Below, one piece after another: positions 2,326-43,871 of a stretch of 64,000 bases of DNA; the stretch's first letter is position 1; every line of letters begins with the position of its first letter. The stretch lies in assembly GCA_965603825.1 (NCBI GenBank), contig CBFDEM010000039.1, forward strand, positions 496,001 through 560,000. The letters run 5' to 3'. A program made the position numbers and the translations under genes. Under the pieces are notes generated by a model that was not told where the DNA came from, ran no database searches, and saw only the letters and a list, made by a program, of their open reading frames with translations. The stretch comes from Blepharisma stoltei ATCC 30299. Its lineage: Eukaryota > Protista > Ciliophora.

Positions 2326-3613
2326 TTAGCTAATTTTGCTTTTAAATAGCGTAGGGGTTGAATTGATACGCGATAAAAACAGCCCACGATTTAATTCAAC
2401 AATTTTAGAGCCAAGACTTTGATTAGGCTTGCCAATAGTCCGAAATGTTTTTCTAAGATCTCTAGTCATGCCTTCTTTACTGATTTTTGAAATAATGGTG
2501 TTTCGACGTGGATCAGCTCTAGCAGCAAATGTCTGTGGTGTTTTTGGAGATGTAGGCGATGAAGGCATTTTTGGCTCTGAAAGCAGTGGAGTACTTGCAT
2601 GCGAGCTTGGTTGTAGCGAAAATCTAGATACAGATTTTCTGGGTTTTTTTAGAATTTCTTGCAATTCTGATTTTAGCTTTAAAATAGTTTTATCACTTTG
2701 GATTAAAATTTTGTTTTTTTCTATTATATCGGCCTCAAGTCTTTTTACTTCTTCTTTGCATAAATAATTGGCTTCTTTACTAGATAAGACCGTTGTCCTT
2801 AATTTCTGTTGACTACTTTCATTTTCAATTTTTTTAATTTCTTCTTCTAATAATTTTCTATTTCCAATAGTCTCATCCAATTCTACCCTCAAGTTTTTGA
2901 CGCTTTCTTTCATGATCTGCTCTTCAGAATTTTCAATTTCAAACTCTTTTTCTTTTAATTCTTGATTTTTCTCTTTAAGTTTTTCTTCAAGTTTCGATAT
3001 AATGATATTTTTATTTTCAATAAAATCTTCTAATTCCTTTAATTTTTGTTTCATTTTGTCAACGGAATTAAGACTCTGCGTGATCTTTGAATATGCAGAA
3101 TTTATGCTGGTCCTTTCCTCTTCTAACCTAACAATAAGGTCTAGGTAATTCTGGTTTTGGTTTTCGACTTGGATTGCTTTTTTCATTAAGAATTGAACAT
3201 TTGGATTTAGTGTTTTAGAGGATTCTGAAGGAATCCTCAAATTTGAATACTCAAGAGATTTTTTCTTTGAAGCTAAAATTTTGTTTTCTTCAGATAATTC
3301 TTCAAATCTTTTTATTAAATTTTTGTCACTATGTAGATTTTTACACTGAGGAAAAACTCGGGTTAGCTGGCTCATTTGAAACTGTGAGGCGGCGGAATAT
3401 TGAGCGCTCATATTCAATTTCTTGGAGCATTTGCTGGAGTGCATTTTGGGATTGGTTTATTTTGGAATCAAGGAGTTTTAGGTTTGGCTGAGATGCTTTT
3501 GAAGAAATCCTTGAGTTTATTTCTGAAAGTTTGGATTTTAAGTGCTCCATTTGCTCTCCCATTGCGTCAATTGTGTTTAAGTAATTTTCTATTTTTGCAT
3601 CTCTATCTTCCAT
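2326..3613 (-). CDS. Coiled-coil protein, 2 exons
   Basis: ORFs 3341..3613 and 2326..3444 are joined in frame by the 16-nt intron 3329-3344 (GTAAAAATCTACATAG). Confidence 0.8.
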
Positions 3614-4086: not shown

Positions 4087-4983
4087 ATGTTTAGGAATCT
4101 GACAAGTGAAAATGTAGATGACTTCTTTAGACCTACAAAGCCAAGGTCGAAAACCTTGTGGGACGTTGATATTTTTTACACTCCACAAAGAAGCATTATA
4201 AGACAAGATTCACTTGAGCTTGAAGATAAGCGGTGTGAGTACTATATAAACAAAGTATCAACAAATGGCTATCGTCAATATAACTCAACCACCGATTCTC
4301 TTCCAATTCCTAAAGGTGATTCTCCTTATGCACTTGCCAAGCGGGCTGAATATGTCTATAAAGATCTTTCTCAGGCTAAACTTTTGTATCAACAAGCTAT
4401 AGACATGGGGCACAGAGCGGAAAGCGCTATAAAAGACTTGGCAAGTATTTTACATCAAGAAAAGAAGACAAAGGAAGCTTGTGAGTTGCTGATGAAATAT
4501 TCACATATTTTTACAGACCAAGCGAAGTTTAGGAATTTATATGAAAATCTCCAACGGCAAATTATTCCGTCGGGAAATTGTTTAAACCAGTCACTTAGAC
4601 TGTCACCGTTAGCGTATCAAGATAATGAAATTTCAGTTAAAAGACTGTTTAAAAACCCTGGAAGGATCGTCAATATAAAAATTAAAACGGATCCTTCCAA
4701 AGTTAAGTATGCGATCATAGAGTTCGCAAGCCATTCAGCTGCTAGAAAAACTTTGGAAAGTTTTCACAGATGGGAAAAATATAAAATTGACTGGCTTTCT
4801 GTTAGCGGAGAAGTTGTAGCTCCTGTTATACATCCTTATCATAAGCGTCCTGATGCTGGAGTCAAAAGAAGTAGCGATAGCCAACATCGAGATTATGCTT
4901 CTGGTAGGATGAAGAAAGAAAAAGTAGAAGAACTTAGCATTGCTGAGCAGCTTTTAGGAAGAGATTTATTTGCTATTTTGTAA
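4087..4983 (+). CDS. MS5/TDM1/SDI1-type TPR domain + RRM-like domain protein
   Basis: PKGDSPYALAKRAEYVYKDLSQAKLLYQQAIDMGHRAESAIKDLASILHQ resembles the recalled plant MS5/SDI motif (PxGDSPYVRAKHAQL..KD...AI.LFW.AINAGDRVDSALKDM). The C-terminal KYAIIEF..HSAARKTL is RNP1-like. Confidence 0.75.
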   Translation: MFRNLTSENVDDFFRPTKPRSKTLWDVDIFYTPQRSIIRQDSLELEDKRCEYYINKVSTNGYRQYNSTTDSLPIPKGDSPYALAKRAEYVYKDLSQAKLLYQQAIDMGHRAESAIKDLASILHQEKKTKEACELLMKYSHIFTDQAKFRNLYENLQRQIIPSGNCLNQSLRLSPLAYQDNEISVKRLFKNPGRIVNIKIKTDPSKVKYAIIEFASHSAARKTLESFHRWEKYKIDWLSVSGEVVAPVIHPYHKRPDAGVKRSSDSQHRDYASGRMKKEKVEELSIAEQLLGRDLFAIL

Positions 4984-6444: not shown

Positions 6445-6481
6445 CTTATATAGATTTATGACTATTTTAATTAAAGTAGCT

Positions 6482-7837
6482 TTATAATTTTGTGACATCA
6501 ATCTCATCCAGAAAATAGTCATTTTTTGCCAATATATGGGTGGAGTATGACATATCATTCATCACGTCTCTGATTACAGTGACAAACTCAGGCAAAATTA
6601 GTTCATCTCTTGGCTTTTTTGTTTGAATTCTCAAAATAGTCAAACCTTTAACAACATTTTCAAAAGTATCTAAAATCATATAATCCTCAGCATATATAAA
6701 ACAAAGCAACGTCCTATGTACAGTTTTCCTTGTTCTATCTCTTCGCTTTAAATAAGAAATGTATTCTCTTGATGATATTATATTTGATTCAGTCGTTTTT
6801 AAATTTCTAGCATCATCAATCATAAGTTCCCTTACATATAAATATGTATAGCTATTGTTATATCCTCTCCTTTGGACTCTTTCAACTATTGTTCTGTCAG
6901 CCTTCTGGCGCATTAAAAATGTTTCTTCAACTGATATCTTTTGATATTCTATATAGTCTGGCATTTTCCAGTCATGAGGACGCATTTTTATTAAAAATTT
7001 GTAATTAAAATGGTTCTGTGATGGCAAGTTAAGGTGACTGAAGACAATTTCAATGCATTTTTCTATTTTTTGGTCAAAAGATGATACTCTTTCATTATCA
7101 ATAATAAACATCTTTGGATGACCTGTCCAAGCTCTAAGTAGTTGCCTGTCAATATTTCTAGCTTCTTCTAAATCTTCATATCTCGCAACATTATTTTTAT
7201 TAGAAAAATGCTTTTCTGCGCCTTGAGCAGCTGTAACGAGATGCAATAGAATATCATATCTACAGTCTCTTAAGTGAACTTTCGTTAAACCCATTTCATC
7301 TAATAAAGCTTGCCATAGATCTTGCGGGATATATGCAGCTCCGTCCATAACCCCGCGATCACAGATAACAATTGCTTTACCGCCACTGTGTTCAGCAATT
7401 GTAGTAAAAATATCTTCGAGGGCCAATTGAAGTTTTACTAATCTCAATTGAAAATCAATTTTTTGGGTATCATCAAAATTTGACATATTAATCATCGCCC
7501 CACCAGATCTTAAAAGTGTGGCTGCTTCAGGGACCGTAAAAACTTTATACCCTTGCTCAGGAAGTCTTAAAGACAGCCTTGCTAAGCTTGTAGTTTTCCC
7601 TGCACAAGGCCCACCTGAAATACAAATTCTGGGAACTTTTTTAGATCTCCATGAAATTTCGGACACTTTGGGCAATGAAAGAATTGACTTTTCTGAGGAA
7701 ATTTTTGTCACACTCTTAAAGCGGAGCGGAGGTAAGCCAGGGGATAGTGGAGGCTCCTTTGGTTTGAATTTTTGATAGACTAAGTAGCTGAGGATCACTA
7801 TGCAAACCATTAAAAGGCCTGAGTTCAAATCAGTCAT
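6482..7837 (-). CDS. TTD14/NadR-like AAA_28 P-loop protein with N-terminal TM and C-terminal CYTH-like domain
   Basis: RICISGGPCAGKTT Walker A, VPEAAT and ICDRGVMD motifs; hydrophobic N-terminus. Confidence 0.8.
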   Translation of the reverse strand: MTDLNSGLLMVCIVILSYLVYQKFKPKEPPLSPGLPPLRFKSVTKISSEKSILSLPKVSEISWRSKKVPRICISGGPCAGKTTSLARLSLRLPEQGYKVFTVPEAATLLRSGGAMINMSNFDDTQKIDFQLRLVKLQLALEDIFTTIAEHSGGKAIVICDRGVMDGAAYIPQDLWQALLDEMGLTKVHLRDCRYDILLHLVTAAQGAEKHFSNKNNVARYEDLEEARNIDRQLLRAWTGHPKMFIIDNERVSSFDQKIEKCIEIVFSHLNLPSQNHFNYKFLIKMRPHDWKMPDYIEYQKISVEETFLMRQKADRTIVERVQRRGYNNSYTYLYVRELMIDDARNLKTTESNIISSREYISYLKRRDRTRKTVHRTLLCFIYAEDYMILDTFENVVKGLTILRIQTKKPRDELILPEFVTVIRDVMNDMSYSTHILAKNDYFLDEIDVTKL

Positions 7838-23863: not shown

Positions 23864-24751
23864 CTAAAAGCCAAAGAACAGATCAGGATCAATGTCCTCA
23901 TCGTCAACCTCTTTGAACAAGCAAAGTGGCTCGGCGTTGATTTCCTCAGGCTCGCAGACATCAATGATTTCATCAATACCTTTCTCAACCATCTTGTTTT
24001 GTGGCAGTGAAAAGTTCGACACATCATTGGTGCTTTCTACTGCAAGCCATGGCTCGATGCCAATATTATCAAACATTATTTTTTGGACATAAAATTTCAG
24101 CAATTTCCAGCTATTCATGCATTCTGAAGAATGCTGAGGAGCTCTGCAGCACCTTAACTTGAATTTTTTAGATAAAATATCAGGATCGAATTCGGAAAAT
24201 ACGTAGTCTGTATAATAAAAATAGGACTCTCTTACTTCAATTGGCTCGAAATATTTCCTGCAAAACTTTCCATTAAAGCTCTTTGGAAGACCATCCTCTT
24301 CTGCTTTTCTCTTAGTTTTGCCATCTGTTTTTGGCCCTGCTTCAGTTTTGCTTTCTTGGCTTAATATGTTTTTATATTGGGTAAATGTTTTTGTGAGACG
24401 ATCCCAGAAGCTTTTGGCTTGAGCTGAAAATACATTTAAGGTCCTTTTGGGGATAATTCCTTTTTCTATTTGCCGGTTGACACGCTTATGGCCTCTTATC
24501 ATTTTACATCTAAGGTACTCTTTCTTTGGAGGCTTTGGCTTAGAGAGGCTTTCAAAGCGATTTAAAATTTTTGTGTCAACAATTTGCTTTCTTCCTGTCG
24601 ATTTTTTGGTGGAATAGAGTTCCTCAGTTTCATGCTGGGCTTCTTGAGCGCCAAGTGGCTGAGGCTGTGGGAGATCTAAGAAGTCCCTGAAATCGAAGTC
24701 GTTTAAGTGAAACGACGACGGGCGTGCAAAAGACTGATTGTTACGACTCAT
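23864..24751 (-). CDS. Uncharacterised family protein (KKEYLRCKMIRGHKR...CCxxxxHxxxC), copy 1
   Basis: 295-aa ORF, near-identical to 24972..25859. Confidence 0.85.
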   Translation of the reverse strand: MSRNNQSFARPSSFHLNDFDFRDFLDLPQPQPLGAQEAQHETEELYSTKKSTGRKQIVDTKILNRFESLSKPKPPKKEYLRCKMIRGHKRVNRQIEKGIIPKRTLNVFSAQAKSFWDRLTKTFTQYKNILSQESKTEAGPKTDGKTKRKAEEDGLPKSFNGKFCRKYFEPIEVRESYFYYTDYVFSEFDPDILSKKFKLRCCRAPQHSSECMNSWKLLKFYVQKIMFDNIGIEPWLAVESTNDVSNFSLPQNKMVEKGIDEIIDVCEPEEINAEPLCLFKEVDDEDIDPDLFFGF

Positions 24752-24971
24752 TGTACTTGTAAATATGAAATTATTAAGTAAGTGATGTATTAAGGAGAAT
24801 ATATAATGTAGCCAATAACATATACAAAATATTTAAATGTTTTTGATAACTTTCAAATTTTTTTCGCTTGCTTAGCTAATAAAATAGCATTAAATTATAG
24901 AAAATTATTTATTATTTAATATTAAGGATTATAAATTATAGATAGTAAGAATTAACTCAGTAAGAGGAAAT

Positions 24972-25859
24972 CTAAAAGCCAAAGAACAGATCAGGATCAA
25001 TGTCCTCATCGTCAACCTCTTTGAACAAGCAAAGTGGCTCGGCGTTGATTTCCTCAGGTTCGCAGACATCAATGATTTCATCGATACCTTTCTCAACCAT
25101 CTTGTTTTGTGGCAGTGAAAAGTTCGACACATCATTGGTGCTTTCTACTGCAAGCCATGGCTCGATGCCAATATTATCAAACATTATTTTTTGGACATAA
25201 AATTTCAGCAATTTCCAGCTATTCATGCATTCTGAAGAATGCTGAGGAGCTCTGCAGCACCTTAACTTGAATTTTTTAGATAAAATGTCAGGATCGAATT
25301 CGGAAAATACGTACTCTGTATAATAAAAATAGGACTCTCTAACTTCAATTGGCTCGAAATATTTCCTGCAGAACTTTCCATTAAAGCTCTTTGGAAGACC
25401 ATCCTCTTCTGCTTTTCTCTTAGTTTTGCCATCTGTTTTCGGCCCTGCTTCAGTTTTGCTTTCTTGGCTTAATATGTTTTTATATTGGGTAAACGTTTTT
25501 GTGAGGCGATCCCAGAAGCTTTTGGCTTGAGCTGAAAATACATTTAAGGTCCTTTTGGGGATAATTCCTTTTTCTATTTGCCGGTTGACACGCTTATGGC
25601 CTCTTATCATTTTGCGTCTAAGGTACTCTTTCTTTGGAGGCTTTGGCTTAGATAGGCTTTCAAAGCGATTTAAAATTTTTGTGTCAGCAATTTGCTTTCT
25701 CCCTGTGGATTTTTTGGTGGAATAGAATTCCTCAGTTTCATGCTGGGATTCTTGAGAACTGAGTGGCTGGGGCTGTGGGAGATCTAAAAAGTCCCTGAAG
25801 TCGAAGTCGTTTAAGTGAAGCGAGGACGGGCGTGCAAAAGATTGATTGTTACGACTCAT
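24972..25859 (-). CDS. Same family, copy 2
   Basis: 295-aa ORF offset by 1108 bp from copy 1. Confidence 0.85.
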   Translation of the reverse strand: MSRNNQSFARPSSLHLNDFDFRDFLDLPQPQPLSSQESQHETEEFYSTKKSTGRKQIADTKILNRFESLSKPKPPKKEYLRRKMIRGHKRVNRQIEKGIIPKRTLNVFSAQAKSFWDRLTKTFTQYKNILSQESKTEAGPKTDGKTKRKAEEDGLPKSFNGKFCRKYFEPIEVRESYFYYTEYVFSEFDPDILSKKFKLRCCRAPQHSSECMNSWKLLKFYVQKIMFDNIGIEPWLAVESTNDVSNFSLPQNKMVEKGIDEIIDVCEPEEINAEPLCLFKEVDDEDIDPDLFFGF

Positions 25860-28450: not shown

Positions 28451-29329
28451 TTACAATCCAAAGAACAGATCAGGATCAATATCCCCATCCTCCACTTCTT
28501 TAAACAAGCAGAAATCATCCCTAATATCCTGAGGAGAGCACACATCAATAATCTCATCAATCCCTTTTTCCACATTTCTTCCTGATGAAGCCGAGAAGCT
28601 TGAAGCATCAGTGCTTTCCAACGACATCCAAGGCTCAATCCCAATGTTGTCGAACATGATCTTTTGCACGTAAAACTTCAGCAATTTCCAACTATTCATA
28701 CACTCAGAAGTATGCTGAGGAGCTCGGCAGCACCTTAACTTGAATTTTTTGCACAAAACATCAGGGTCGAACTCTGAAAAAATGTACTCTGTGTAATAAA
28801 AATAAGACTCCCTCACCTGGATCGGCTCAAAGTATTTCTTACAGAACTTCCCATTAAAGCTCTTTTGTAGCCCGTTTTCTTCACAGGTGCGCTTTGATTT
28901 GCCGTCAGTCCTGGGTCCAGCTTCAGTCTTGCTTTCCTCACTTAGTATATGTCGGTAGAGGTGGAAGCATTTGGTCAGTTGATCCCAGTAACTTTGAGCT
29001 TTGTCTGAGAAAACATTTAATGTCTTCTGAGGAAGAGTCCCTTTTTCTATTTGTCGGTTGGCCCGCTTGTGGCCTCTTATCATCTTGCAGCGGAGGTATT
29101 CCTTTTTAGGAGGCTTTGGCTTGGAGAGGCTTTCAAAGCGGTTAAGGATTTTGGTGTCCACGATTTGCTTGCGGCCAGAGGTGGATTTTCGCCGAGTTGA
29201 AAAAGGCTCCTCAGTATCTACAAGGCCTTCAGGAACTCGGACTGGAGAAGGTTGAGGAAAATCCAAGAAGTCTCTGAAATCTAAGTCAACAAAATGCAAG
29301 GCTGTGTTGCTTGAAAATGACTGGTTCAT
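28451..29329 (-). CDS. Same family as 23864/24972, older copy 3
   Basis: 292 aa with long identical peptide blocks but diverged synonymous sites. Confidence 0.85.
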   Translation of the reverse strand: MNQSFSSNTALHFVDLDFRDFLDFPQPSPVRVPEGLVDTEEPFSTRRKSTSGRKQIVDTKILNRFESLSKPKPPKKEYLRCKMIRGHKRANRQIEKGTLPQKTLNVFSDKAQSYWDQLTKCFHLYRHILSEESKTEAGPRTDGKSKRTCEENGLQKSFNGKFCKKYFEPIQVRESYFYYTEYIFSEFDPDVLCKKFKLRCCRAPQHTSECMNSWKLLKFYVQKIMFDNIGIEPWMSLESTDASSFSASSGRNVEKGIDEIIDVCSPQDIRDDFCLFKEVEDGDIDPDLFFGL

Positions 29330-39929: not shown

Positions 39930-41876
39930 ATGCTATTCGAAGACCCAGAGTTCGGTCCAAATGAGTATTCTATATATGGAGAAAACCCAACGATAGACAT
40001 CTCGTATAAAATTCAATGAAAAAGGCTTGTAGAAGTGCTAGGGATACTTACAAGACTATTTTCTGACGAGATGGTTTTCACTGATATAACTCAAGGGCGC
40101 CTAGGTAACTGCTGGATCGTCAGCGCTATAATTGCATTAACAGAGATGCAGCCTTTTAAAATATGAGTCATGTTTGACCAAGATAAAGCAAATCATAAGA
40201 AAGGAAAATACATTATAAGGTTTTATGAGCATGGCGAGCTCAGAAAAGTCGTCGTTGATGATTTAGTACCATGCTGCGCAGACACAGGTAAGCCTATTTT
40301 CGGCATGAGTAATTGGATTGATAAGTGGTGGCCACTATTAGAAAAAGCTTATGCAAAAGTGTATGGCTCTTATTTAGCTTTAGTAGCTGGATTTACTCAT
40401 GAAGCCTTTATGGATCTGACAGGGCTTCCTTCATTTAAATATGATATAAACAAAAATGAAGCTGATAATATTAAGCGTAGGCTTATTATGAATTGTCGCA
40501 AGCAATTCCCAATGGTAGCTTCTACTAAGTGTGGTATTAGTGAAAGTTTTGGAATGAGACCAAATCACTGCTATACAATATTAAGAACAATTCAAGCAGA
40601 TGGCTATTTTCTTATTAATTTGAGAAACCCTTCAGGATACAGCATGTGGAGCGGAGATTTTAGTCTGAACTCTGAACTCTGGACTCAAAGTATCATAAAT
40701 ACAATAGAAAGAGTTTGGTCACACTTCAATTTAAGAGATGGTAGCTTCTGGATGGAATATGCAGATTTTTTGATGTATTTTGATGTCCTTTATGTATGCA
40801 ATATAGAGCTTGGTAAAGAAAAACGCGAAAAAAATATTTTTAAAAAAGTTAAAAAAGGAGTCGGCTCAAAAGCGACATTTTACTATAAAGTAACTGTTGG
40901 AGAAGAAGGAGCAGAAGTCGTGTTTGGGCTTCACCAAGAAGACGAAAGAAGTGTAGGGGTTAAAGAATGCAGAAAATACTTAGATCTAGGGATTTCAGTG
41001 ATGAGATTAGATGACAAAAAATATAAGCCATATTGCTGCTCTAAACAAACTGCTCTAAGTAGAGACTCACAATTGCAGATGTTCTTGCCTCAAGGAGAAT
41101 ATATAGTTGTCCCAATCAGTTCTGGGACATCTTTAACTAGACCGAAAAATTCTTGAAAAAAATGTTTCCCTTTAATTGCTGATAAATCAAAAATGCATCC
41201 TCTATTTAAAAGCGCAATAAAGGATATTTTCCGAAGGGCTGATATCCAAATGGAGCAATCTGTGGGCTACAAAGAATTTATGGCTGTATACCACAAAGTA
41301 GACGAATTTATTACTGAAGAATATTTTAATGAGGAAATATGTGGGACCTTTGGAAAACATAATCGACTGACTCTAAATGGCTTTTACCAGTTTTTTTGTG
41401 ACCAAGCCCTAGAGGATGAAGAGGAGACAAGAAAAACTTTTAAATGACTAGGCTATGATAAAGATTTTTACAGTGAAAAGTGAAGAACCGTAGTATTTAC
41501 TCTACATTCAAATAAAGATGTTGATTTAGAGACACAAAGATTAAATGAAGAAACAAACTTGAAAGCTTGGAAATCAATGGCAAAACTTCATGGGGAAGTT
41601 GAACGCTCTAAAAATGTAGATATTTATAAAATAAAGCAATCAGACGGTTGGTCTATCCTAGCACATAACAAGTCCGCTGAAGTGATATCCATAAAATCAG
41701 ATTTCAGTGAGTCTTCTAATGTGAATTTTGCTACAGGGTCTGAGAAATGCGAAAATCTTCTGGGCCCTGGATCCTGACAAATAATTCAGCATTTATTTCG
41801 AAAGGATGAAAATTTAAATGCTGAGTGCAGAAAGAACTTTATGTTCCATAAAAAAATTAATGTTAATTATATATAA
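39930..41876 (+). CDS. Calpain-like cysteine protease, copy 1
   Basis: FEDPEF, QGRLGNCW, LLEKAYAK, NHCY, LRNPSG; EF-hand-like region; multiple TGA=W. Confidence 0.9.
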
Positions 41877-41927
41877 TTCATAAACAAATATACAGAAAAA
41901 TTAATTTACTCGGATATGATAAGAAAT

Positions 41928-43871
41928 ATGCTATATGAAGACCCTTATTTCGGCCCAAATGAGTATTCTATTTACGGAGATAGCCCAAATAGAACCATAC
42001 CATACGAAATTCAATGAATAAGGCCTCATCAGATTTTAGGGCCAGCTGCAAGGCTATTTTCTGACGAAATGGTCTCCGATGACATAAAGCAAGGATATTT
42101 AGGTAACTGCTGATTTATCAGTGATATGATTGCATTGATAGAGCACCCTATGAAAATAGCCGGCTTATTTGGCACTGATGAATTAGAGCACAGCCAAGGA
42201 AAATATCACATAAGGCTTTGCAAAAACGGCGAAATCATCAATGTCGTCATTGATGATTTAATACCGTGCATTGCAGGCACAGACACACCAATTTTTACCA
42301 AAAGTAACTGGGTTGATTTTTGGATGCTATTATTAGAAAAAGCTTATGCAAAGGTGCATGGTTCTTATTTATCTTTAAAAGGAGGATTCGCTCATGAAGC
42401 CTTTATGGACTTGACTGGGCTTCCTTCATTTAGATACGAAATTGACATAATTCAAGAAAAAGACGAGGTTGAAGAATTTTTATTGAAACTTATTGACTGA
42501 AACAGTAAAAAATTCCCAATGGTAGCTTCCACAAGAAGCGGAATCCAAGATAATTCAGGATTGTCCCCAACTCACTGTTATACAATAATAAGAGTAGTTC
42601 AAACAGGCAATTTTTTGCTTATAAACTTGAGAAATCCATGGGGAAGAGCCAGCTGAACAGGAGATTTTAATCCTCGGTCCGACTGCTGAACTCAAGAAAT
42701 AATCGAAAAAGTTAACCAAAATGGGCGTCTTAACTTAGACGATGGGAGTTTCTGGATGAAATATGAAGATTTTTTGATATATTTTAACGTCCTTTATCTA
42801 TGCAATATCGAGCTTGAAATAGAAAAACGTGAAAGAAACATTTTTAAAAAAATTGAAGGAATCGGCTCACAAGCTTTATGATGCTATATGATCACTGTAA
42901 GAGAAAACGACACAGAAATTGTCCTTGGGATTCACCAAGAAGATGAAAGAAGTGTAGGAGTAAAAAAATATAGGAAATATTTAGACTTAGGAATAGTAGT
43001 AATGAGCTATGATGGCAATGTCTATATGCCTTACCGCTGCTCAGAAAAAATGCTGACTGATAGAGATCTACAAATGGAGCTCTCTTTACCTCAAGGAAAA
43101 TATTTAATTACACCTATAAGCTCTGGGACAGCTTTTACGAGGCCTAGTGATTCTGAAAAACAAGTATTTCCTTTGATTACTGAAGAAGGAAGTATGCATC
43201 CTTTATTTCAAAGCACAATAAAAGATATTTTCCGAAGGACTGATATACATATGAACCAAGCTGTAAATTACCAAGAATTCATGACTATGTACTCTAGAAT
43301 TGAACCAGACCTTACTGAGGATGAATTTACTAGCATTCTCTGCAGGACTTATGATAGCAATAGCAACCGGCTTACCTTAAATGGCTTCTATGAATTTTTT
43401 ATGGCCCAGACACTAGATAAAGGTGAAGAAACAATAAGAAATTGCTTATCATTACTAGGATATGACAGCGATTTTTATAGTTTGCAATCAAGAGCTGTAG
43501 TATTCACAATGCACTCAAATAAATATGTGGATTTAGTGACACATAGCTTAACTGAGCAAATGAACTTACAAGCATGAATGTCGGTGGCTCTGCTAAAAGG
43601 AAAAATTGATGCGAATGTTTTAAATGTAAAAGTTTATAAAATAGTAAAATCAGGAGGATTCACAATACTAGCCCATAATGAGTCAGCTTCCATTATGAGT
43701 ATAACTTCAGATTTCAGCAGGTCTTATAATTTGATTTTTTCTTCAGGGTCAGCTATTTGTGAAAACGTACTCGATGCAGGGTCTTGGCAAATAATCCAAC
43801 ATTTAGTTTGCAGGGATTTAAAATCAGAATACCAGATATCTTATTATGTAAACGTTAGAAGCATTTCTTAA
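41928..43871 (+). CDS. Calpain-like cysteine protease, copy 2
   Basis: YEDPYF, QGYLGNC-TGA(W), THCY, LRNPWG; colinear with copy 1. Confidence 0.9.

What the first reader, a model, noticed from the sequence alone, without database searches (positions are those of the whole stretch)
4300..4800. Plant MS5/TDM1/SDI1-type TPR domain fused to an RRM in a ciliate
Seen: GDSPY.LAK.A...KD...A...AI..G.R.ESAIKDLA.ILHQ followed by an RRM-like domain. Established: this TPR signature defines plant TDM1/MS5/POLLENLESS3 (meiotic exit; TDM1 represses translation through eIF4F in P-bodies) and SDI1, usually regarded as plant-restricted. Inference: an RNA-binding ciliate homolog may point to an older translation-repression or meiotic-exit module, possibly acting in conjugation.
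Basis: partly seen in the sequence, partly recalled or inferred. Interest (0 to 1): 0.8.

Follow-up and report, generated by a model that had tools for sequence, protein, structure and literature searches.

The report
Plant-type TPR–RRM protein family in alveolates
A protein-binding module known only from plant meiosis and sulfur regulators (TDM1/SDI1) also occurs in ciliates and their relatives, shortened and joined to an RNA-binding-type domain, and at full length in bacterial defence-like ATPases, but nothing here ties the ciliate protein to meiosis.

Summary
Observation confirmed. Window 4087-4983 (+) is an intronless 298-aa gene (Blepharisma stoltei Contig_44.g1022) under strong purifying selection (core dN/dS about 0.03). 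It has a five-helix TPR module (aa 72-159) and an RRM (aa 169-246). The TPR is specifically MS5/TDM1/SDI-type: a moss family member picks out exactly the 15 paralogues in this genome (E 4e-12 to 5e-8; next TPR E 0.11); profile-profile probability 99.3%. The fusion is alveolate-wide: Stentor 23 copies, Tetrahymena one, Perkinsus. Only the first half of the plant four-TPR domain is shared. The full-length domain occurs in bacterial TPR-cold-shock-STAND proteins beside a second STAND gene (HEPN-like in one locus), and plants nest among these in the tree (eukaryote monophyly not rejected, p=0.18). None of the 15 paralogues is among the held genes induced more than 6.3-fold at 26 h of conjugation, and Paramecium, Oxytricha and Euplotes lack the orthogroup. 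The RRM lacks two of three RNP aromatics. Best reading: an adaptor linking a peptide partner to RNA through a non-canonical surface. No paper describing it was found; the scan noted three paralogues elsewhere in this genome.

The parts
4087..4983 (+). Complete intronless CDS, 298 aa plus TAA, no UGA codons; B. stoltei Contig_44.g1022, one of 15 paralogues
   Evidence: core dN/dS 0.031 vs a Logan homologue
4087..4293 (+). Variable, low-confidence (probably disordered) N-terminal arm, aa 1-69
   Evidence: pLDDT about 45-57; not conserved among paralogues
4300..4563 (+). MS5/TDM1/SDI-type TPR module, aa 72-159: PxPxG arm plus five helices (two TPRs and a capping helix); Y81, K85, S113, K116, D117 and N150 shared with plants and bacteria
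4564..4590 (+). Linker, aa 160-168, lower confidence; the two domains are probably not rigidly packed
   Evidence: pLDDT 69, pTM 0.62 for the core model
4591..4824 (+). Non-canonical (quasi-) RRM, aa 169-246; RNP2 position 2 is K/R and RNP1 position 5 is I/L/V; conserved F188-x-N-x-x-R and W236
4729..4749 (+). Near-invariant S-H-S-A-A-R-K at the start of RRM helix 2 (aa 215-221), a candidate non-canonical binding surface
   Evidence: S217 99%, A219 99%, R220 93%, K221 96% over 129 sequences
4912..4977 (+). Conserved C-terminal helix pair, aa 276-297 (G291 and L294 at 90% or more in heterotrichs)

Best explanation
An alveolate family of small adaptor proteins, expanded in heterotrich ciliates. 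The N-terminal half of an MS5/TDM1/SDI-type TPR domain binds a short polar or acidic peptide of a partner protein in its groove. A flexibly linked quasi-RRM binds RNA through a non-canonical surface (basic helix-2 motif, the FxNxxR loop, W236) rather than the usual beta-sheet aromatics. The protein would tether a regulator to particular RNAs for post-transcriptional control, not specifically in meiosis. Shown: gene, folds, homology, distribution, residue conservation. Inferred: groove ligand, RNA binding, cellular role.
For: The two-domain architecture is kept from heterotrichs to Tetrahymena and Perkinsus. The residues invariant across ciliates, myzozoans, bacteria and plants are polar (Y81, K85, S113, K116, D117, N150) and fall at TPR helix-A positions 2, 5, 6 and 9, which line the ligand groove (established TPR knowledge; no coordinates inspected). 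The best RRM match in the VIA search is Glorund qRRM3, an RNA-binding RRM without RNP aromatics (Z 9.1, rmsd 3.3, 75 residues). Some bacterial relatives carry a cold-shock domain just before the same TPR, and plant TDM1 works in RNP granules, so this TPR recurs in RNA contexts. Family members occur in MMETSP culture transcriptomes, e.g. Fabrea salina.
Against: No binding or expression data for this gene. Two of three RNP aromatics are lost, which also fits a protein-binding RRM. Three guessed-RNA runs cover all three neighbours but not this gene, so it is low or stage-limited there. SDI1 uses the same TPR family in nuclear transcription control. Z 9.1 is modest and shows fold, not function.
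Confidence: 0.45

Rival explanations
1. Functional counterpart of TDM1: recruited to P-bodies in conjugation, sequesters eIF4F, represses translation and ends meiosis.
For: Specific TPR homology. TDM1's mechanism is documented. One SMG5/6/7-like EST1 gene is in the genome. The gene is absent from three guessed-RNA runs of unknown stage.
Against: Only half of the TDM1 TPR domain is present (TDM1 has four TPRs, aa 61-224; ciliate match ends near residue 95 of 192). No conserved T-P motif. 0 of 15 paralogues in the held top 1,738 of 14,819 genes ranked by 26-h induction. No Paramecium, Oxytricha or Euplotes member in the orthogroup. 15-23 paralogues in heterotrichs is odd for a meiotic switch.
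Confidence: 0.13
2. A protein-only scaffold: the RRM has lost RNA binding and uses its helical face to bind proteins, as UHM, Y14 or UPF3-type RRMs do; both domains bridge two proteins.
For: RNP2 and RNP1-5 aromatics are absent, and conservation peaks on helix 2 and a loop rather than the sheet.
Against: The conserved patch is basic and aromatic (H216, R220, K221, R193, W236), which suits nucleic acid; RNP1-3 is still Y/F in 56% of sequences.
Confidence: 0.25
3. A sensor inherited from a bacterial defence system, acting in alveolate RNA surveillance or anti-viral or anti-symbiont responses.
For: The closest non-alveolate relatives by profile score are bacterial TPR-CSD-STAND proteins next to a second STAND gene, HEPN-like in one locus and beside an integrase in another. 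The family is expanded in heterotrichs.
Against: No NTPase or nuclease in the ciliate protein; strong purifying rather than diversifying selection; the bacterial system matches no full PADLOC model, so its defence role is inferred.
Confidence: 0.1
4. Chance or convergent resemblance of a generic TPR.
For: TPRs are repetitive; Pfam gives only a weak generic TPR_19 hit.
Against: A clean gap of more than six orders of magnitude in the reciprocal search; hhalign 99.3%; shared non-TPR N-terminal arm and 15 conserved positions.
Confidence: 0.02

Closest known systems
Plant MS5/TDM1/POLLENLESS3 and SDI1/SDI2 family
   Same: Homologous N-terminal TPR cap: 38% identity over 74 aa to moss and grass-like members; same P-x-G-D-S/T-P-Y..AK and S-A-x-K-D-x-A motifs; TM 0.87-0.88.
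   Different: Lacks TPRs 3-4 and the plant C-terminal region; has an RRM that plants lack; no conserved T16-P17 CDK site; 15 paralogues; no evidence of meiotic expression.
Bacterial 1,300-1,600-aa TPR-(cold-shock)-STAND/AAA_16 proteins paired with a second STAND gene (unnamed; e.g. Ca. Parabeggiatoa RKZ80197 cluster)
   Same: Same TPR cap, scoring 55-94 bits (mean 81) on the alveolate profile, mostly above full-length plant transcripts at 61-70.
   Different: Four-TPR domain inside a large NTPase with a two-gene arrangement; no RRM.
Quasi-RRMs of hnRNP F/H and Glorund
   Same: RRM fold without canonical RNP aromatics; best RRM hit in the VIA search (5uzn, Z 9.1).
   Different: No sequence relationship shown (13% identity); the conserved residues differ; single RRM fused to a TPR.
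Orthogroup OG0000384 of Singh et al. (bioRxiv 10.1101/2021.12.14.471607, Data S2)
   Same: Lists the same 15 Blepharisma genes with TTHERM_00092800, 23 Stentor genes and Perkinsus EER19226.
   Different: An unannotated automatic cluster; no link to TDM1/SDI and no function described.

Membership tests
MS5/TDM1/SDI TPR family | Specific sequence similarity to plant members above generic TPRs, reciprocal | tested here: met
MS5/TDM1/SDI TPR family | Complete four-TPR domain (TDM1 aa 61-224) | tested here: not met
   Alignment ends after about 75-95 aa and is followed by the RRM
MS5/TDM1/SDI TPR family | One clade with plant members to the exclusion of bacterial homologues | tested here: inconclusive
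   Best tree puts plants among bacteria (branch 100/98); AU test p=0.18 on 89 columns
TDM1 subfamily | Conserved N-terminal T16-P17 CDK motif | tested here: not met
   6 of 14 paralogues have no S/T-P before the TPR; the rest have scattered, unaligned sites
TDM1 subfamily | Meiosis-specific expression | tested here: inconclusive
   Absent from the held top of the 26-h ranking (ratio 6.26 or more); table cut, Pfam-annotated genes only, ranked after meiosis
TDM1 subfamily | Binds SMG7 and eIF(iso)4G, localises to P-bodies | not testable with these tools
   Needs experiments; an EST1/SMG-like gene exists
RRM superfamily | Beta-alpha-beta-beta-alpha-beta fold, Pfam RRM_1 above cut-off | tested here: met
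Canonical RNA-binding RRM | Aromatics at RNP2-2, RNP1-3 and RNP1-5 | tested here: not met
   RNP2-2 K64%/R11%; RNP1-5 I/L/V; RNP1-3 Y/F 56%

The most novel reading that the evidence does not exclude
The MS5/TDM1/SDI TPR began as part of a bacterial two-gene STAND defence system and was taken up twice: whole by land-plant ancestors (giving TDM1 and SDI1), and halved and fused to a quasi-RRM by the alveolate ancestor, where it became an RNA-targeted regulator that may converge on translation control.
Probability: 0.3. Interest if true: 0.75.

Novelty: new variant of a known kind. Interest (0 to 1): 0.55.

Why it matters
TDM1 is described as a family conserved in plants and is a target for engineering unreduced gametes; its origin is not addressed in the papers searched. 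This shows that its signature TPR exists in alveolates and in bacterial STAND proteins, and it names six polar residues shared by all (Y81, K85, S113, K116, D117, N150 in this protein) that can be mutated in TDM1 or SDI1 to map the binding groove. Tetrahymena has a single copy (TTHERM_00092800), so one knockout can test the meiotic idea. The bacterial gene pair is a candidate undescribed defence system.

Tried and rejected
Pfam, NCBIfam, PADLOC and PDB sequence searches gave no family-level name. Word-indexed homologue searches showed no plant protein: where 20 of 140 hits were not displayed, with a bacterial TPR. Plant sequences were therefore fetched with a short degenerate DNA pattern for a motif recalled from memory. 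The large protein search was used once, because word and family searches left the plant link open. The GTDB scan for the bacterial protein found one weak locus, so its taxonomic range is unresolved. Foldseek and VIA found only generic TPR and RRM folds. No paper joins TDM1 with ciliates or mentions TTHERM_00092800. Six Stentor paralogues were not in the held regeneration supplements. Rejected: pseudogene (dN/dS 0.03), wrong genetic code (no internal stops or UGA), contamination (15 paralogues on macronuclear contigs, flanked by ciliate genes with a 16-nt intron).

Full report
Gene and organism. The finding lies in an uninterrupted ORF at 4087-4983 (+), 298 aa, ending in TAA with no UGA codon. 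Paralogues are named Blepharisma stoltei in public databases. The genome has 64 contigs and 41.5 Mb. PiggyBac positions tie G000 contig 39 to Contig_44 of the published assembly, and the published orthogroup table lists Contig_44.g1022 with 14 other genes on exactly the contigs found here. Against a Logan homologue at 84% identity, core dN is 0.053 and dS 1.73 (ratio 0.031), so the gene is under strong purifying selection.

Anatomy. AlphaFold2 gives a low-confidence N-terminus (aa 1-69), five helices (80-159), an RRM (169-246) and two C-terminal helices (276-297). The core alone has mean pLDDT 93 but pTM 0.62 and a weak linker, which suggests two independently folded domains. Pfam RRM_1 passes its cut-off, and structure searches return RRMs at TM 0.74-0.79. 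Over 129 non-redundant family members the RRM lacks the RNP2-2 aromatic (K 64%, R 11%) and the RNP1-5 aromatic (I/L/V). It keeps F188-x-N-x-x-R/K, F213, S217, A219, R220, K221 and W236. The best RRM match among 48,161 solved chains is Glorund qRRM3 (Z 9.1), which shows fold, not function.

Is the TPR really of the MS5/TDM1/SDI type? Yes. The Atlas structure search ranks SDI1-like (TM 0.88) and Pollenless3 (0.87) clusters directly after the ciliate cluster and above generic TPRs (0.76 or less). I fetched plant sequences with a motif pattern; one is a Sphagnum transcript in the cluster of KAH8936634. The alveolate TPR profile scores the two full plant transcripts at 61 and 70 bits (E 1e-13 and 4e-15 at library size), against 22 or less for single generic TPR domains. 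The query is 38% identical to both over 74 aa, and hhalign gives 99.3%. In the reciprocal test the moss TPR hits the 15 paralogues at E 4e-12 to 5e-8 and the next TPR at E 0.11. That two fetched exons are Arabidopsis SDI1 and TDM1 (L072, L023) rests on my memory and is unverified. Exons were used singly, never joined.

Distribution. The TPR+RRM fusion occurs in Blepharisma (15), Stentor (23), Fabrea, Tetrahymena (TTHERM_00092800) and Perkinsus marinus and P. chesapeaki. It also occurs on unnamed contigs that I call myzozoan: they group with Perkinsus in the tree, and a neighbouring eL32 matches PDB 5xxb best (Toxoplasma, from memory). Paramecium, Oxytricha and Euplotes have no member in the orthogroup (not retested by HMM). 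Only the best 150 of 1,780 hits were seen, so presence in other eukaryotes is untested.

A bacterial third branch. The same search returned 1,300-1,600-aa proteins with this TPR cap, often after a cold-shock domain, and a C-terminal AAA_16/nSTAND NTPase. One cluster is Ca. Parabeggiatoa. On three contigs the gene is directly followed by a second AAA_16 gene of about 500 aa; one has a weak HEPN_Swt1 hit and one lies beside an integrase. No complete PADLOC model matches, so a defence role is an inference from architecture. The moss protein aligns to these over about 200 aa (up to 101 bits) but to ciliate proteins mostly over only 65-105 aa (at most 67 bits). In an 89-column tree alveolates fall on one side of a 100/98 branch and plants nest among bacteria, but the AU test does not reject plants+alveolates (p=0.18). 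One or two acquisitions therefore remain open. Fifteen positions are shared by all four groups, among them the polar Y81, K85, S113, K116, D117 and N150. By TPR register these line the concave groove (established knowledge; inference for this protein).

Meiosis? TDM1 has four TPRs, a subfamily-specific T16-P17 CDK site, and works through SMG7 and eIF(iso)4G in P-bodies (PMC4752240, PMC13284301, PMC11062462). SDI1 binds MYB28 in the nucleus (PMC5055385), so the domain alone does not imply meiosis. The ciliate proteins lack TPRs 3-4 and a conserved T-P site. In the published conjugation series none of the 15 genes is in the held first 1,738 of 14,819 rows (26-h ratio 6.26 or more). That test is weak: the table is cut, lists only Pfam-annotated genes (three paralogues pass the RRM_1 cut-off here), and ranks a post-meiotic time point, whereas meiosis runs 2-18 h. 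Three guessed-RNA runs of unknown stage cover all three neighbours but nothing between 3770 and 5463; assembled contigs cannot prove silence. Family members do appear in MMETSP culture transcriptomes, presumably vegetative.

Verdict. It is a new variant of a known kind: a half-length MS5/SDI-type TPR fused to a non-canonical RRM, alveolate-wide, most likely an adaptor between a peptide partner and RNA (0.45). A protein-only scaffold (0.25), a TDM1-like meiotic role (0.13) and an immune role (0.10) are the rivals. It should not be filed as a TDM1 orthologue. The scan's first readers flagged three paralogues elsewhere in this genome; these are not independent evidence. Interest 0.55.

Noticed in passing
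L020:1573-7883; L110:3456-9771; contig of P0216: Bacterial two-gene unit: a TPR-(cold-shock)-STAND protein of about 1,550 aa followed by a STAND protein of about 500 aa (weak HEPN_Swt1 in L110; integrase upstream in L020). No full PADLOC match; candidate undescribed defence system and the closest full-length relative of the plant TDM1/SDI domain.
   Followed up: partly
L016, L018, L019: Compact myzozoan-like contigs keep the TPR-RRM gene near an SGT1/ecdysoneless gene (with MFS and chromo-SNF2 genes in two of them).
   Followed up: partly
window 6482-7837 (-): Expressed 451-aa protein with an AAA_28 nucleotide-kinase-like domain and an unassigned C-terminal half; poly(A)-like end near 6447 in one run.
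   Followed up: no
window 3329-3344: 16-nt intron spliced out in run X3 in the upstream minus-strand coiled-coil gene.
   Followed up: no
window 23864-25859 and 28451-29329 (-): Three related ORFs of about 290 aa with similar N-termini, two in tandem; family not identified.
   Followed up: no
window 39930-43871 (+): Two tandem calpain-like ORFs of about 650 aa (by eye).
   Followed up: no
G000:C3:211226-211942 (-): Single full-length EST1_DNA_bind (SMG5/6/7-like) match in the genome, the candidate SMG7-type partner.
   Followed up: no
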